From positions 1 through 64,000 of IMG/VR virus record IMGVR_UViG_3300038463_000730: 64,000 nucleotides of DNA. The stretch is one strand, 5' to 3'. Below, piece after piece: positions 34,098 through 58,047 of the stretch. The number at the start of each line of letters is the position of its first letter. Position 1 is the first letter of the stretch. Position numbers and translations under genes: made by a program. The notes beneath the pieces are model-generated. The model saw only the letters and a list, made by a program, of their open reading frames with translations. It did not search any database and had not been told where the DNA came from.

Positions 34098-34442
34098 ATG
34101 ATTACTCGGTATGTACTTCCTTGGACCGCCATTCCGAAGGCTCTACGAGCCCCGGATTATCGGTACTATTACTCACGAACAATCGTTTCCCCAACCATTC
34201 CGTATGGCATGGGGTTGTCTGCTGGTTCGGTTCATCTTCTTAATGGGAAATACAAAGGACAATGTGGTCCGAATGATTGGCAATGGGCCGTATGGAACTG
34301 GCAAGAGGAACCTCTTCGGCATTCAGTTGATTCATGGTCTGGAGTCGGTTGCACGGAAGAACAAGCTCGTCGTTATGTAGATAAAAAGCTACGTAAGCTT
34401 GGATTCAAATTCGTTACAAAAAAGTGTTTGGTGTTCCTATGA
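34098..34442 (+). CDS. family B paralogue
   Basis: YVLPW...QARRYVDKKLRKLGF...KKCLVFL-stop. Confidence 0.75.
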   Translation: MITRYVLPWTAIPKALRAPDYRYYYSRTIVSPTIPYGMGLSAGSVHLLNGKYKGQCGPNDWQWAVWNWQEEPLRHSVDSWSGVGCTEEQARRYVDKKLRKLGFKFVTKKCLVFL

Positions 34443-34891
34443 GCGAAGCTGCAACCAAACGCCCGGATGAAAACGACATCCTACGAATCGTACATAATAC
34501 CATTACAGGAGCTATTCGTCGGATTGGTCACCAGCTCGCCGAAAACAAATGGAAAGAAGGACCGGTCATTTACGGATATCATCACGGTCATGCGTGGTGG
34601 CAGGATTGTGCCCGTAAATGTAAATGGCGATTCGCAATCGAGAAACAGCTTGATATTGCCGGTCGCACCCGTTTCGATATACGAGCGGTCGTCGTTCATA
34701 ACGAGAATCCGTTCATGCAAGAGATCCTGGAAAGCCACTCGCTATTTGAAATCGTTCTAGGACCGGACTTGAACCTCATCGGAGATTACACAAAACAGAA
34801 CGTCATCATTCCACTAGACGAGAACGTGATGAGAACGTTTGTTCTCGGCAGTAAAGATTGTCTATGCAGTCGTTTAACAAATTTCATCTAG
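34439..34891 (+). CDS. family A paralogue
   Basis: RIGH...CARKC...CSRLTNFI-stop. Confidence 0.8.
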   Translation: MSEAATKRPDENDILRIVHNTITGAIRRIGHQLAENKWKEGPVIYGYHHGHAWWQDCARKCKWRFAIEKQLDIAGRTRFDIRAVVVHNENPFMQEILESHSLFEIVLGPDLNLIGDYTKQNVIIPLDENVMRTFVLGSKDCLCSRLTNFI

Positions 34892-49104: not shown

Positions 49105-49277
49105 TCGTGTTCCTCTTCCTTACGTACAGGGTGTACATAGCCAGAACGTGCGACCGGCTTCTTCTCTATCGGAAAGCACTTGACCGGATGGATCGGTCTC
49201 GACTCGTTCTCCAGCTCAGTATAAGGGTAGTACAAATTTCGGTGGATAGCAAAGTCTTTCGGGTCGATCACGTTCAC
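49101..49277 (-). CDS. small hypothetical protein (not in ORF track)
   Basis: Hand-translated 58 aa; 4-nt overlaps with both neighbours. Confidence 0.5.
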   Translation of the reverse strand: MNVIDPKDFAIHRNLYYPYTELENESRPIHPVKCFPIEKKPVARSGYVHPVRKEEEHE

Positions 49278-49537
49278 TCCATAATGTGTCCGATTAGCTC
49301 GGTCTCTTCAACATCCAATCGAAATACTTCTTTGGCAAATTTGATTGCCAGCTCGTCTTTACCACTACGTACAAGTTCCTCAAGAACTTCGAGGTAGATT
49401 TTCTCGGGAGAGTATCCGATCAATTCCTGTGTATTTCCACCACAAATAGAAAGGATGAATCGATCCGCAGCCTGATTGTTACAAAACGATTTACTTTTGC
49501 CGCTGTAACCTCGGCACTTAACAGTAATGATCTTCAT
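49274..49537 (-). CDS. family C paralogue
   Basis: MKIITV...ELIGHIME-stop. Confidence 0.75.
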   Translation of the reverse strand: MKIITVKCRGYSGKSKSFCNNQAADRFILSICGGNTQELIGYSPEKIYLEVLEELVRSGKDELAIKFAKEVFRLDVEETELIGHIME

Positions 49538-49538
49538 C

Positions 49539-49802
49539 TTATTCCATCACATGTCCAGTAAGATCGGAGGCCATGATATCAACGTTCTTTTTGAAATGCC
49601 GATAAAGCGCTAGTGCAATATCGTATTGCTTTAGCTCAACCAACTTCTTGTAAGCTAGTTCAGCTGCTTGCGGCATGAAGTCGCCATAGCTAGTGAGATG
49701 GTTGTTAATAAACTTGATTGCTCGTTTCTGAGCAAGAAGTTCAGTTGAAAACGACTCAACGTTATGACACGGTTCCCCGAAAACAACTGTCCAGATTTTC
49801 AT
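49539..49802 (-). CDS. family C paralogue
   Basis: MKIWTV...DLTGHVME-stop. Confidence 0.8.
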   Translation of the reverse strand: MKIWTVVFGEPCHNVESFSTELLAQKRAIKFINNHLTSYGDFMPQAAELAYKKLVELKQYDIALALYRHFKKNVDIMASDLTGHVME

Positions 49803-50062
49803 TCGAGTGCATGCCCGGTCAAATCTGATTCGTGGATTGTTCCGACCTCTATCTCAAGGTTGGCCAACCTCAATGCCTCGCGATACTCCTCATGTTGCAT
49901 CAGAATATCAAACGTAGGTTTCAACCGCCCCATACTTGGGGCGCATGTAAGAACATGCTTCAGCGCTTCTTTCTCTGTAGCAAACGAAGTCACTCGCTTT
50001 ATCTTAGCCGAACCACTTGAGTTACTTCTATAGTCCCAAACGATAGCTGTCCAGATTTTCAT
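49799..50062 (-). CDS. family C paralogue
   Basis: MKIWTA...DLTGHALE-stop. Confidence 0.8.
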   Translation of the reverse strand: MKIWTAIVWDYRSNSSGSAKIKRVTSFATEKEALKHVLTCAPSMGRLKPTFDILMQHEEYREALRLANLEIEVGTIHESDLTGHALE

Positions 50063-50328
50063 TCCATCACATGACCGAGTAGGTCATTCTCCTTGATACT
50101 AATTCCTGAGTGTGACTTATACTTCTCATAGAACTCATAAGCCAGTTTGTATTCTTTCTCGCGGACAAGAATGTTTAGCACGAGATTGAACGGATCTTTT
50201 GGATCATACCGATAGGCGCTACGATCATTGATTAGCTCGATCAGCAGCGTTGCTACGTACTGGTAAGCCAGTTGTTCAGTCGCGTACGAGACTATCTTTG
50301 CCCTGTGCTCTATTGTCCATATCTTCAT
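50059..50328 (-). CDS. family C paralogue
   Basis: MKIWTI...DLLGHVME-stop. Confidence 0.8.
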   Translation of the reverse strand: MKIWTIEHRAKIVSYATEQLAYQYVATLLIELINDRSAYRYDPKDPFNLVLNILVREKEYKLAYEFYEKYKSHSGISIKENDLLGHVME

Positions 50329-50591
50329 TCTAGCGGATGTCCTTTCAGGACAGTGGACTCAACACAAATCTGAGCATCCTTATTGGATGAGTTAAACAAA
50401 TCCAACATGAATTTGTACTGTTCCTCGTCCTTTAAGTAATGAAGGAGCCCAAGAAGTCGCCTTGGGACATTATGGCGTCGAATCATAACTAGTTCGGCCG
50501 CTCGCTTCAGCGCAATGGCCTCGGTCGCATAAGCCTCGACTTCAGGAGAATCTTCTTCATGCTGGGAAAACACGACAGACCAAATCATCAT
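50325..50591 (-). CDS. family C paralogue
   Basis: MMIWSV...VLKGHPLE-stop. Confidence 0.8.
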   Translation of the reverse strand: MMIWSVVFSQHEEDSPEVEAYATEAIALKRAAELVMIRRHNVPRRLLGLLHYLKDEEQYKFMLDLFNSSNKDAQICVESTVLKGHPLE

Positions 50592-51136: not shown

Positions 51137-52393
51137 TTAGTACGTGCCAGAAGAATTGATCAGTTCGTTAATCTGCTGTAAGAACTGGGCTGCCTTTGGA
51201 TTCTGGCGACCATTTCCTTCGTAGAATTTCTTCCGCCATTGAAGTGCCGGTAGATAAGTTTTGTTCCACTTGTCCTGCGACTGCTTCCGTTTCGGATCTT
51301 GACTCTGTCGAGAGTTCTGAAGGTATTGAACGAGCTTCTTTGAAGCATCGATAATGTTCTGTGCGATCTGATCGTCACTCTGTGTATTTTGTTTTGGCGC
51401 CTGAGTAGCTGCTTCACCGACGTTTTTGTTTTTGATCGCGGTAGCAACGTCCGGCATCAGCCGGATAGCTTGAATCAATGGCTCAACTTTGACAGCTTGC
51501 TCACTTAGACGTTTATCTGTATCGACTGCCTGCGGAGACTGACCGGCCTGTACGAGCTGGTTAGCGAGTTTCTCTGCATTCTGAAGGCCCAAGGCCAGGG
51601 CCGAACCAAACTGTTCTTTCGGCAACTGATTGGCTTCGTAAATAGTTTGAGCCAAATCATTTGCTGTATCGGTGATGTCTTTTTTACCAAGAACATTTGC
51701 CAAGACGCCGATCTGCTTCAGCAAATCTTTCAAGCTAACAATGTTGTTCCACTCATTCGTACCACCGGCCTCTTGCGCTTTCTTGCGCAACTTCAAATCA
51801 GCCAACTTATTGAATGTTGCGGCCAACGATGCGACGTTCGAAATAGGTTTCGAAACCGGACTCGATGGGCTTGGAGTCGGAGCCTGTTTTTGTTTTGGTG
51901 ATTGAATAACCGGTGTCGAATCAATAATTCGAACGACTTCAGGATCGGTCAAGATACCGTTGATGTACGATATGTTTACCAGAGCGTTCGGATCCTGTGC
52001 TCCGGCCGTTGCATAGTAATGCTGACGCCATTGAAGTGCCGGTAGCCACTTACGTACGAATTGATCGTAGAGTGGTTTCTGAGCTGCCGTGAGTCGGGTC
52101 GGGTCTGCGCCTTGTAGATTGGCAAGAATCTTTTTCGATTCATCGATGATGTGCTGCACAATCCGATTTTCACCCGCCGAGTCAACCGTTTTTGGAGCAA
52201 GACGATTGGTAATATTCGGATCTACCGGTCCACCGGTACCGGCCGATTCAGACGGTCCACCGCGAGTCTGCGTAGGAATGCTGTGTTCAGCTTTTTCCTG
52301 AGCGATAGTCTTGTTCGTATGCTCGTAGCCAGGCTGAATCGGTCCGCCCGTACCGGCAGCCGGAGAGACAACATCAGAACGCTGACTTAGTAC
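51137..52393 (-). CDS. Gln/Ala-rich repeat-domain protein; -1-frame continuation of 52387..53028
   Basis: Frame is open from 52435 to 51137; two PAL(Q/V)WR domains; no strong independent start. Confidence 0.7.
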   Translation of the reverse strand, partial: VLSQRSDVVSPAAGTGGPIQPGYEHTNKTIAQEKAEHSIPTQTRGGPSESAGTGGPVDPNITNRLAPKTVDSAGENRIVQHIIDESKKILANLQGADPTRLTAAQKPLYDQFVRKWLPALQWRQHYYATAGAQDPNALVNISYINGILTDPEVVRIIDSTPVIQSPKQKQAPTPSPSSPVSKPISNVASLAATFNKLADLKLRKKAQEAGGTNEWNNIVSLKDLLKQIGVLANVLGKKDITDTANDLAQTIYEANQLPKEQFGSALALGLQNAEKLANQLVQAGQSPQAVDTDKRLSEQAVKVEPLIQAIRLMPDVATAIKNKNVGEAATQAPKQNTQSDDQIAQNIIDASKKLVQYLQNSRQSQDPKRKQSQDKWNKTYLPALQWRKKFYEGNGRQNPKAAQFLQQINELINSSGTY

Positions 52394-53028
52394 TTTTTTT
52401 TTACGTTGAGTCTTCCAGCTTTTTGCTGAGCTGCTTCACCCGTATTTGTCGGTGGCGCTGCGGGACCAGGCTTTGGTGCCGTGCCGTTCGGCATCGGAGC
52501 CGGTGTACCAGATCCCATATTCTTGTAACCATTGGTGATGGTGTAGAAAGTCTTGTCATCAGCCATGATGCCGTTAATTTCAGACATCAACAGAATCGCG
52601 TCCTGATCGTTCAATCCGGCCGCACCCTTAGCAAGCCAGTTACGACGCCAAACGAGAGCTGGATATAATTTCTTCATGAACTCATCAATCTGTTTACGCT
52701 GAGCATCCGTGACGCTCTGCATATTGATGCCGCTCAAGCTAGCCAAGATACTCTTAGACTGGCTGATGATGTTCTCGGTGATCTGTTTCTCACGAGCCCA
52801 ATCTTGTTTTGGCTGTGGCTTCGCTTCACCCGTGCCAGGTTCGGCGTGACCAGATGGTGTTGGTCGGAAACCAGAATCAATATTTACATTGGTCGGGTCA
52901 ATAGACTGTGCCGCGACCGGGTCAGTTGGGGTTGCATTTGGTTCAGCAGGCGTTTGCTGTGCCAGAACCCGACGCAAACGTTGCTCGGCCATTTTTTCAA
53001 ACACGTTAGCTTTTTCAAGAATTTTCAT
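52387..53028 (-). CDS. repeat-domain protein, N-terminal part
   Basis: 213 aa; NIISQSK...LYPALVWRR domain. Confidence 0.8.
   Translation of the reverse strand: MKILEKANVFEKMAEQRLRRVLAQQTPAEPNATPTDPVAAQSIDPTNVNIDSGFRPTPSGHAEPGTGEAKPQPKQDWAREKQITENIISQSKSILASLSGINMQSVTDAQRKQIDEFMKKLYPALVWRRNWLAKGAAGLNDQDAILLMSEINGIMADDKTFYTITNGYKNMGSGTPAPMPNGTAPKPGPAAPPTNTGEAAQQKAGRLNVKKKY
52393..52402 (-). other. slippery site A_AAA_AAG (A9G run), candidate -1 frameshift
   Basis: GTA AAA AAA AAG TAC TAA in frame 0; -1 frame continues V-L-S-Q-R... Confidence 0.65.
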
Positions 53029-56724: not shown

Positions 56725-56949
56725 ATGGTTTCGAACAAGCGTGATCGATTGGAATTTGAAGGCGAAGTGGTTGAGGAGAACAAGGGCAAATTCCTTGTGA
56801 AGGTTACGGAGACCCACTCCGTGCGTTGCACTCTGGCCGGGAAGGTCCGTCAGAATCAGGTGCATATCCTACCCGGTGACAAAGTAAAGATTGAAGTTAG
56901 TCTTTACGATACGACTCAGGGTCGTATCACGTTCCGTATGAAGAAGTAA
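56725..56949 (+). CDS. infA: translation initiation factor IF-1
   Basis: LEFEGEVVE...F.V...CTLAGKVRQN.VHILPGDKVKIEVS.YD...GRITFR. Confidence 0.92.
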   Translation: MVSNKRDRLEFEGEVVEENKGKFLVKVTETHSVRCTLAGKVRQNQVHILPGDKVKIEVSLYDTTQGRITFRMKK

Positions 56950-57237: not shown

Positions 57238-58047
57238 TTATGGAACGAGCGCTTCGACCCGCGTCGGAACCCATAAGTCGTTGGTCATATCGGCAGCAAT
57301 ATAGGCCGAACTAAACCATGCGTGTCCTGGGTAGTTCGTATCTCCCCATCCCGTTCCCCACGAATTACGAACGAGGAACTGAATGTCCGGGTTACGACGA
57401 ACACCAACGATGCACTGCGCGTGGCCACCGGCCGGATTGGTTGGTGGTTGCCACACATTCGTGCCACCGGTCCAGCTTTCATACTGTTGCGAAACCTGAG
57501 TTCCGAACACGACCGGGTGATTGGCGCGAATCGCCATTTCAACATCGGCAATTCTCTGGTCACCGGTTGAGTCGATTCGGTAGAAGTTCGACAATGGAAC
57601 TTCGTTATCGCTGGCTACTTTGTAAGCCTGTGTTGGTGGTTGGGTAAATACAGCAGCTTCGACATACGGCCACTCCGACTCCGGACAAATACCGAAGCGC
57701 ATTAGAGAGTCAAAAGCATTGTGAATGAATGTGCCCTGGTCTACATTCGTATCATGATCGTATGAACGAGCATTCCAATAAACGAACAAACGTGACAACG
57801 GTGTAATCGTTACGCCTTCGACACCCTGTAGAATCTCCAACGCGCCACATGTTGAGTTGGCAACACACGAGCCGAGCTGACCCTGATCAAAACATGGAAC
57901 CTTTTCAGAGATGATGTACGGGTTGGCTGCTGGAGTCGCGGCCATCCTAGCAAACGCGAGCTTCGTCATGCCGCCGCGCATGACTGAGAATTTGTTGTAA
58001 GGAACCCAGCTTGGTGTTGGTCGGTATCCATTGATATTGTAAGGCAT
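57238..58047 (-). CDS. papain-like C1 family cysteine peptidase
   Basis: DQGQLGSCVAN, GGHA, VRNSWGTGWGD. Confidence 0.9.
   Translation of the reverse strand: MPYNINGYRPTPSWVPYNKFSVMRGGMTKLAFARMAATPAANPYIISEKVPCFDQGQLGSCVANSTCGALEILQGVEGVTITPLSRLFVYWNARSYDHDTNVDQGTFIHNAFDSLMRFGICPESEWPYVEAAVFTQPPTQAYKVASDNEVPLSNFYRIDSTGDQRIADVEMAIRANHPVVFGTQVSQQYESWTGGTNVWQPPTNPAGGHAQCIVGVRRNPDIQFLVRNSWGTGWGDTNYPGHAWFSSAYIAADMTNDLWVPTRVEALVP

What the first reader, a model, noticed from the sequence alone, without database searches (positions are those of the whole stretch)
51137..53028. Probable programmed -1 frameshift at A_AAA_AAG joining two ORFs
Seen: ORF 53028-52387 ends GTA AAA AAA AAG TAC TAA. The -1 frame is open from 52435 through to 51137, about 80 codons upstream of the ORF-track start at 52159. 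The domain alignment extends upstream of that start (ENRIVQHIIDESK versus EKQITENIISQSK versus DDQIAQNIIDASK), so the intervening region is coding. Established: A_AAA_AAG is the classic efficient bacterial -1 slip site (dnaX, IS3 family), and A9 runs also allow transcriptional slippage. Inference: a 213-aa short form and a ~630-aa long form are made in a fixed ratio. The proteins do not look like the usual tail chaperone G/GT pair.
Basis: partly seen in the sequence, partly recalled or inferred. Interest (0 to 1): 0.7.

Follow-up and report, generated by a model that had tools for sequence, protein, structure and literature searches.

The report
A9 recoding site joining two ORFs
In a 435-kb peat phage, a run of nine A's sits where a 213-codon reading frame ends and a 418-codon coding continuation with no start codon begins one base back, so a 23-kDa and a 68.5-kDa protein are probably both made; this is an ordinary kind of recoding in a gene with no known relatives.

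Summary
On the minus strand, ORF1 (53028..52387) ends GTA AAA AAA AAG TAC TAA. The -1 frame is open from 52435 to 51137, and its first ATG/GTG/TTG is the GTG at 52159.

The 78 codons between the slip site and that GTG are coding. Their codon-usage score matches real genes, and the GTG lies inside helix 1 of a confidently folded domain.

A9 is not a sequencing error. It is identical in contigs from three independent peat samples.

This is the only A/T run of 9 or more in the 434,688-bp phage genome. It sits at the boundary between two paralogous ~190-aa modules.

I found no strong downstream RNA structure, no upstream SD-like element and no Rfam hit. RNA-polymerase slippage on A9 (giving A10 mRNA) is therefore at least as likely as ribosomal -1 frameshifting at A_AAA_AAG.

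The protein has no homologues among 1.84 billion representative proteins, and no RNA data were found. Conservation and expression could not be tested, so a recently broken gene rescued by chance slippage is not excluded.

Verdict: a probable new member of a known kind of recoding, of moderate interest.

The parts
52387..53028 (-). ORF1, zero frame, 213 aa (23.2 kDa). Contains an N-terminal helix, a Pro/Thr-rich linker, helical repeat domain R1 and a Pro/Gly-rich tail. Starts at ATG 53028 with an AAGG Shine-Dalgarno.
52394..52402 (-). A9 run in the sense strand, the only A/T homopolymer >=9 in the genome. It is a candidate RNA-polymerase slippage site: an A10 mRNA reads straight into the -1 frame.
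   Evidence: identical in independent contigs
52393..52399 (-). In-phase -1 slippery heptamer A_AAA_AAG. An overlapping in-phase A_AAA_AAA lies at 52396..52402.
52387..52389 (-). Zero-frame TAA stop, one codon after the heptamer.
52160..52393 (-). 78 codons in the -1 frame between the slip site and the first canonical start codon. They are coding by codon usage (+0.31 bits/codon; other frames -0.21 to -0.77) and predicted to be a disordered linker. No ATG, GTG or TTG occurs in this frame.
51137..52393 (-). The -1-frame continuation: 418 codons plus stop. The fusion with ORF1 residues 1-212 is 630 aa (68.5 kDa).
52157..52159 (-). GTG, the start of the 340-aa ORF as gene callers annotate it. It lies inside helix 1 of repeat R2. 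GGGTGA sits 10 nt upstream (-6.1 kcal/mol), so internal initiation is possible but not shown.
52534..52794 (-). Repeat domain R1 (ORF1 residues ~79-165).
51917..52180 (-). Repeat domain R2, a helical bundle (AF2 pLDDT 86, pTM 0.76). It begins 7 residues upstream of GTG 52159.
51140..51379 (-). Repeat domain R3 at the C-terminus of the long form.
52366..52387 (-). Weak hairpin starting 5-6 nt after the heptamer (-5.5 kcal/mol, two G-U pairs). The spacing is canonical but the strength does not exceed shuffled sequence.

Best explanation
ORF1 and the downstream ORF are one gene read in two frames. Most expression stops at the TAA just after the A9 run and yields a 213-aa, one-module protein. A minority switches to the -1 frame at the run and yields a 630-aa, three-domain protein with the same N-terminus. 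Two routes lead to the same product (...LNVKKK-VLSQR...). In the first, RNA polymerase slips on the nine A's and makes A10 mRNA. In the second, lysyl-tRNAs slip back one base on A_AAA_AAG during translation. Because no strong stimulatory RNA element is present, I expect transcriptional slippage to contribute most and ribosomal slippage a smaller share. The arrangement probably arose by tandem duplication of an ORF1-like module whose second copy lost its own start. The protein is an all-helical beads-on-a-string phage ORFan of unknown role. The short and long forms would differ in valency, with one copy versus three copies of the same helical-bundle domain. Shown: the sequence anatomy, that the gap is coding, that the A9 allele is real, and the module paralogy. 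Inferred: that slippage occurs, which route dominates, and that the site is maintained by selection.
For: The sequence shows the slip site in phase, with a stop one codon later. The -1 frame has no canonical start for 80 codons. That stretch scores +0.308 bits/codon; true in-frame 78-codon windows score 0.233 +/- 0.10, and only 0-0.3% of off-frame windows reach 0.30. GTG 52159 is residue 10 of a domain model whose helix 1 spans residues 3-24 (pLDDT 86). ORF1 aligns with the -1-frame product at 34% identity over ~150 aa (E = 4e-17), and with a third repeat at E = 2e-8. In the fused reading, module A (residues 6-187) aligns with residues 206-395, so the slip site lies at the module boundary inside a disordered linker. 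A9 is identical in Logan contigs of three independent samples and studies plus the JGI source contig. It is the only A/T run >=9 in 434,688 bp, and the only one of 19 in-phase A_AAA_AAG sites with a long startless -1 ORF. There is no terminator or promoter signal between the ORFs. Precedents for A9-A11 slippage giving two length variants: T. thermophilus dnaX and IS elements (PMC1088944) and C. rodentium tssM (PMC4256274).
Against: There are no homologues anywhere, so conservation of the run or heptamer and purifying selection on the long form cannot be shown. No listed RNA run holds the locus, so neither transcription nor A10 mRNA has been observed. There is no significant downstream structure, SD-like element or Rfam frameshift element. 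All sampled copies are 100% identical over 2-10 kb, so presence in three samples may reflect one clone. In that case a recent A10-to-A9 deletion would look the same. It would also automatically create an in-phase A_AAA_AAG.
Confidence: 0.55

Rival explanations
1. This is a recently broken gene. An ancestral continuous ~630-codon ORF with an A10 run lost one A. The split is not selected, and any long form made by slippage is incidental rescue.
For: Homopolymers are indel hotspots. An A10-to-A9 change in a Lys-Lys-Lys run produces the in-phase heptamer automatically. All sampled copies are clonal, with 0 differences. No conservation evidence is available. The site lacks frameshift stimulators.
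Against: The downstream 418 codons have no stop and full coding-level codon usage. The break lies exactly at a module boundary in a disordered linker and leaves a complete one-module protein, with a stop only one codon later; by my estimate a random shift would reach a stop within 2 codons about 9% of the time. The genome otherwise avoids runs >=8, so an A10 ancestor would be even more exceptional and itself slippage-prone.
Confidence: 0.25
2. These are two independent genes. The downstream protein starts at GTG 52159 (340 aa) or at a non-canonical codon, and no frame change is used.
For: Gene callers annotate 213 aa plus 340 aa. GTG 52159 has GGGTGA 10 nt upstream (-6.1 kcal/mol). That strength is reached by 21% of gene starts but only 7.9% of internal start-type codons.
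Against: The 78 codons upstream of the GTG are coding in the same frame and contain no ATG, GTG or TTG. The GTG truncates helix 1 of the repeat domain. ORF1 paralogy runs through the gap. Internal initiation may occur in addition, but it does not explain the gap.
Confidence: 0.08
3. This is DNA-level phase variation. The A-run is a contingency tract and the phage population mixes A9 (short form) and A10 (long form) genomes.
For: Long homopolymers slip during replication. Only consensus contigs, which drop rare variants, could be inspected.
Against: Four assemblies from three samples all carry A9 with no indel contig. A pattern search allowing A7 to A12 found no other allele in JGI metagenome or IMG/VR contigs.
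Confidence: 0.07
4. This is a sequencing or assembly homopolymer error, and the true sequence is A10 with one ORF.
For: It is a metagenome-assembled genome, and a homopolymer sits at the break.
Against: Contigs independently assembled from different samples and studies give A9 with 0 mismatches and 0 gaps across the site.
Confidence: 0.02

Closest known systems
Thermus thermophilus dnaX and 9A/9T IS-element genes (transcriptional slippage; Larsen 2000, Baranov 2005, PMC1088944)
   Same: There is a sense-strand run of nine A's inside a coding region of a genome that otherwise avoids such runs. A stop lies close behind the run, and two length variants share an N-terminus.
   Different: Here the templated A9 mRNA gives the short product and the slipped mRNA gives the long one, the reverse of T. 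thermophilus dnaX. The gene is a phage ORFan. No mRNA heterogeneity has been measured.
Citrobacter rodentium tssM1 (A11 transcriptional frameshifting, PMC4256274)
   Same: The gene appears prematurely interrupted just after a poly-A tract. Slippage restores the long form alongside the truncated one, and both forms may be functional.
   Different: The run is A9 rather than A11. The frame change needed also differs. There are no homologues with an uninterrupted gene to compare, and no functional data.
E. coli dnaX and IS3/IS911-family -1 PRF at A_AAA_AAG
   Same: The heptamer is identical and in phase. As in IS orfAB, the -1 product is a fusion longer than the zero-frame product and the downstream frame has no start of its own.
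   Different: The defining stimulators are missing: no upstream SD about 10 nt away, no stable stem-loop or pseudoknot 5-8 nt downstream, and no Rfam match. Without them, E. coli data predict under 1% shifting (PMC4066793).
Phage tail assembly chaperone G/GT frameshift
   Same: It is a phage gene pair joined by a -1 slip near the end of the first ORF.
   Different: There is no chaperone or tape-measure family hit and no tail-gene context. The sizes are wrong (a 418-codon extension), and the neighbours are small ORFans.

Membership tests
-1 programmed ribosomal frameshift cassette (dnaX / IS3 type) | In-phase X_XXY_YYZ slippery heptamer | tested here: met
   A_AAA_AAG at 52399..52393 in the ORF1 frame
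-1 programmed ribosomal frameshift cassette (dnaX / IS3 type) | Stable stem-loop or pseudoknot 5-9 nt downstream | tested here: not met
   Only a -5.5 kcal/mol hairpin is present. The 105-nt fold has z = -0.13 against shuffles. Pseudoknots were not modelled.
-1 programmed ribosomal frameshift cassette (dnaX / IS3 type) | Upstream SD-like stimulator about 10-14 nt from the heptamer | tested here: not met
   The best anti-SD duplex is -3.5 kcal/mol (GCUGGAAG)
-1 programmed ribosomal frameshift cassette (dnaX / IS3 type) | Coding -1 frame continuation lacking its own initiation site | tested here: met
   78 coding codons with no ATG, GTG or TTG
-1 programmed ribosomal frameshift cassette (dnaX / IS3 type) | Heptamer conserved among homologues, with reduced synonymous variation | not testable with these tools
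   No homologue was found in 5.8 billion or 1.84 billion protein sets, IMG/VR or JGI contigs
Transcriptional slippage site (9A/9T type) | Sense-strand A or T run of >=9 in a coding region | tested here: met
   A9 at 52402..52394
Transcriptional slippage site (9A/9T type) | Genome otherwise selects against such runs | tested here: met
   There is one run >=9 and three runs >=8 in 434,688 bp. An i.i.d. expectation is about 3.5 runs >=9 and about 50 runs >=7, against 17 runs >=7 observed (expectation is my calculation).
Transcriptional slippage site (9A/9T type) | Insertion of one A in the mRNA joins the two ORFs | tested here: met
   An A10 message reads GTA AAA AAA AAA GTA CTA..., which is the -1 frame. 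An A8 message ends after 9 more codons.
Transcriptional slippage site (9A/9T type) | Heterogeneous A-run length in mRNA but not in DNA | not testable with these tools
   No listed RNA run holds the locus
Phage tail assembly chaperone G/GT | Chaperone family membership and position between tail tube and tape measure genes | tested here: not met
   No Pfam or PHROG hit for either ORF or the neighbours
Phase-variable contingency locus | Tract-length polymorphism among genomes | tested here: inconclusive
   All contigs carry A9, and no other allele was found by pattern search. Raw reads were not available.

The most novel reading that the evidence does not exclude
A huge phage maintains a stimulator-free, dual-mode recoding site: an A9 run with an embedded A_AAA_AAG, placed exactly at a module boundary. 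From one ORFan gene it makes a monovalent 23-kDa form and a trivalent 68.5-kDa form of the same helical-bundle domain. The arrangement arose when a tandem gene duplicate lost its start and was captured by frameshifting.
Probability: 0.45. Interest if true: 0.45.

Novelty: new member of a known kind. Interest (0 to 1): 0.35.

Why it matters
If real, the site adds a recoding event in a huge environmental phage, in a gene family with no known relatives. It would show how tandem duplicates can be fused through a slippery run rather than by losing a stop codon. In practice, annotation pipelines split this gene into 213-aa and 340-aa products and miss 78 coding codons. It would not change what is known about recoding mechanisms.

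Tried and rejected
- **Homology:** Pfam and PHROGs gave nothing for either ORF. blastn and tblastn against the INPHARED phage collection gave no match. A word-indexed search of 5.8 billion proteins returned only the protein itself. Exhaustive phmmer of 1.84 billion representatives returned the protein itself plus two repeat or low-complexity false hits, which BLASTP rejected. Back-translated pattern scans of IMG/VR and JGI metagenomes with the protein and the repeat alignment found nothing. The ESM Atlas gave no usable feature hit. No paralogues occur elsewhere in the genome. The upstream 250-aa neighbour is also an orphan.
- **Fold:** The repeat domain folds well, but Foldseek against PDB, AFDB clusters, BFVD and the Atlas gave only generic three-helix-bundle matches (E > 0.5). 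The whole -1 product folded poorly (pLDDT 55).
- **Alleles and expression:** A pattern search for A7 to A12 alleles found nothing in JGI or IMG/VR contigs. No listed RNA run holds the locus.
- **Other candidate sites:** Two other in-phase heptamers lie near ORF ends, at genome 228281 and window 34418. Their downstream ORFs have their own starts and SD, so I rejected them. The A7 at genome 144485 was also rejected.
- **Phage polymerase:** Pfam Rpb1 and Rpb2 families did not detect a phage multi-subunit RNA polymerase. Divergent versions could be missed.
- **Rfam:** No frameshift element was found.

Full report
**Context.** The window is the first 64 kb of a single 434,688-bp contig with 48.2% GC and 24 tRNA genes. 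The database classes it as an IMG/VR virus record (labelled 'provirus', completeness 100). It is cut from a 502,994-bp JGI peat metagenome contig that is 100% identical to the window over 10.7 kb. The genome encodes a gpA-type large terminase, ribonucleotide reductase, NAD-dependent ligase, a topoisomerase and a PHP-domain PolIII-alpha-like protein. It is therefore a huge phage. Most genes lie on the minus strand, and Shine-Dalgarno-type ribosome-binding sites are common.

**Observation.** On the minus strand, ORF1 (53028..52387, 213 aa) ends CTC AAC GTA AAA AAA AAG TAC TAA.
- The A9 run is 52402..52394.
- The in-phase heptamer A_AAA_AAG is 52399..52393, and a second in-phase A_AAA_AAA overlaps it.
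- The -1 frame is open from 52435 to 51137.
- The first ATG/GTG/TTG in that frame is GTG 52159, 80 codons after the slip site.
- Slipping at the run gives ...LNVKKK-VLSQR..., a 630-aa, 68.5-kDa protein, against 23.2 kDa for ORF1.

**Is the gap coding?** I trained a codon-usage log-odds model on the genome's long ORFs, leaving this locus out.
- The 78 codons 52393..52160 score +0.308 bits/codon in the -1 frame.
- The other five frames score -0.21 to -0.77.
- True in-frame 78-codon windows average 0.233 +/- 0.10.
- Only 0-0.3% of off-frame or antisense windows reach 0.30.

The three repeats align with 16 invariant columns. The R2 repeat folds as a helical bundle (pLDDT 86, pTM 0.76). Its first helix begins 7 residues before the GTG, so starting at the GTG would clip the domain. 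BLASTP of ORF1 against the -1-frame product gives 34% identity over about 150 residues (E = 4e-17), running through the gap, and matches a third repeat at E = 2e-8. In the fused reading, module A (residues 6-187) matches residues 206-395. The slip site therefore lies at the boundary of two tandem paralogous modules, inside a predicted disordered Pro/Gly/Thr-rich linker. A tandem array of five small paralogues lies immediately downstream, which shows that this region duplicates readily.

**Is A9 real?** Logan contigs from the likely source sample (two runs) cover the site with no mismatch or gap. So do contigs from two further independent samples and studies: a 3,196-nt contig in one and a 151-nt contig in the other. 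No A8 or A10 contig was seen. A pattern search allowing A7 to A12 found no other allele in JGI or IMG/VR contigs. Sequencing error is effectively excluded. Minority alleles cannot be excluded, because only consensus contigs were available.

**Is it special within the genome?** It is the only A/T run >=9, and only three runs reach 8. Of 19 in-phase A_AAA_AAG sites in crude gene calls, three lie near an ORF end with a long -1 ORF behind them. The other two downstream ORFs have their own ATG and SD, so they are ordinary overlaps.

**Mechanism.**
- The 105 nt downstream of the run fold no better than shuffled sequence (z = -0.13).
- The only hairpin at canonical spacing is weak (-5.5 kcal/mol).
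- The best upstream anti-SD pairing is -3.5 kcal/mol.
- Rfam finds nothing, and no terminator or promoter signal separates the ORFs.
- In E. coli, heptamers without a stimulator shift only 2-10 times above a 0.07% background (PMC4066793).
- A9 in T. thermophilus dnaX gives about 50% slipped product, and A11 in C. rodentium tssM1 gives about 20-25% (PMC1088944, PMC4256274).

I therefore rank RNA-polymerase slippage (A10 mRNA) as the main expected route and ribosomal -1 slippage as a secondary one. Both give the same protein. An A8 message would add only 9 codons after the valine. No canonical multi-subunit RNA polymerase was detected in the phage, so host polymerase is presumed (inference). The phage encodes tRNA-Lys(UUU). 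Whether this promotes slipping at AAG is speculation.

**Limits.** The protein is a strict ORFan, so conservation of the site cannot be tested. Fold searches gave only generic helical-bundle similarities, so the function is unknown. No listed RNA run holds the locus. All sampled copies are identical and so may be a single clone. A recent A10-to-A9 deletion would give the same picture and would automatically create the in-phase heptamer.

Several points argue against simple decay:
- The downstream frame has 418 stop-free codons with full coding signal.
- The site sits at the module boundary inside a linker.
- The zero-frame stop follows immediately.
- An A10 ancestor would be implausible in a genome that avoids long runs.

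GTG 52159 has a moderately good SD. That strength is reached by 21% of gene starts and by 7.9% of internal start-type codons. An additional 340-aa product is possible, but it would not explain the coding gap.

**Verdict.**

| Explanation | Probability |
|---|---|
| Functional recoding at the A9/A_AAA_AAG site | ~0.55 |
| Recently split gene with incidental rescue | ~0.25 |
| Independent genes | ~0.08 |
| DNA phase variation | ~0.07 |
| Sequencing error | ~0.02 |

The kind of mechanism is well known, but the gene is new. I rate it a new member of a known kind, of moderate interest.

Noticed in passing
window 49274-50591 (minus strand): There is a tandem array of five paralogous 87-89-aa ORFs, each starting MKIW(T/S) and ending DLxGHxME. 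They share 17-30% identity and have no Pfam or PHROG hit. The array lies directly downstream of the locus and shows local tandem duplication.
   Followed up: partly
genome G000:C1 373599-374804 (outside the window): Aragorn calls a suppressor-type tRNA with anticodon CUA, plus three adjacent tRNA-like genes with abnormal (2-nt) anticodon calls, within a 24-tRNA set. TAG still ends 50 of 323 long ORFs, so there is no sign of genome-wide TAG recoding.
   Followed up: partly
window 34418-34424 (plus strand): A second in-phase A_AAA_AAG lies 5 codons before the stop of ORF 34098-34442, with the next ORF (34424-34891) in the -1 frame. That ORF has its own GTG and ATG starts, so I judged this an ordinary overlap.
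   Followed up: yes
window 56725-56949 (+) and 57238-58047 (-): A 74-aa IF1/eIF-1A-like S1-fold protein (PF01176) and a papain-like C1 peptidase (PF00112) are encoded a few kb from the locus, according to precomputed Pfam hits on the matching contigs.
   Followed up: no
genome G000:C1 228281-228287 (outside the window): An in-phase A_AAA_AAG sits at the end of a 201-aa ORF just upstream of the 1176-aa PHP-domain PolIII-alpha-like gene. The A-rich stretch is part of that gene's AAGGA ribosome-binding site, so it is not a frameshift.
   Followed up: yes
whole record: The 434,688-bp record is labelled 'provirus' and is cut from a 502,994-bp JGI contig (window offset 77 nt). Whether the trimmed ends are host DNA or phage DNA was not examined.
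   Followed up: no
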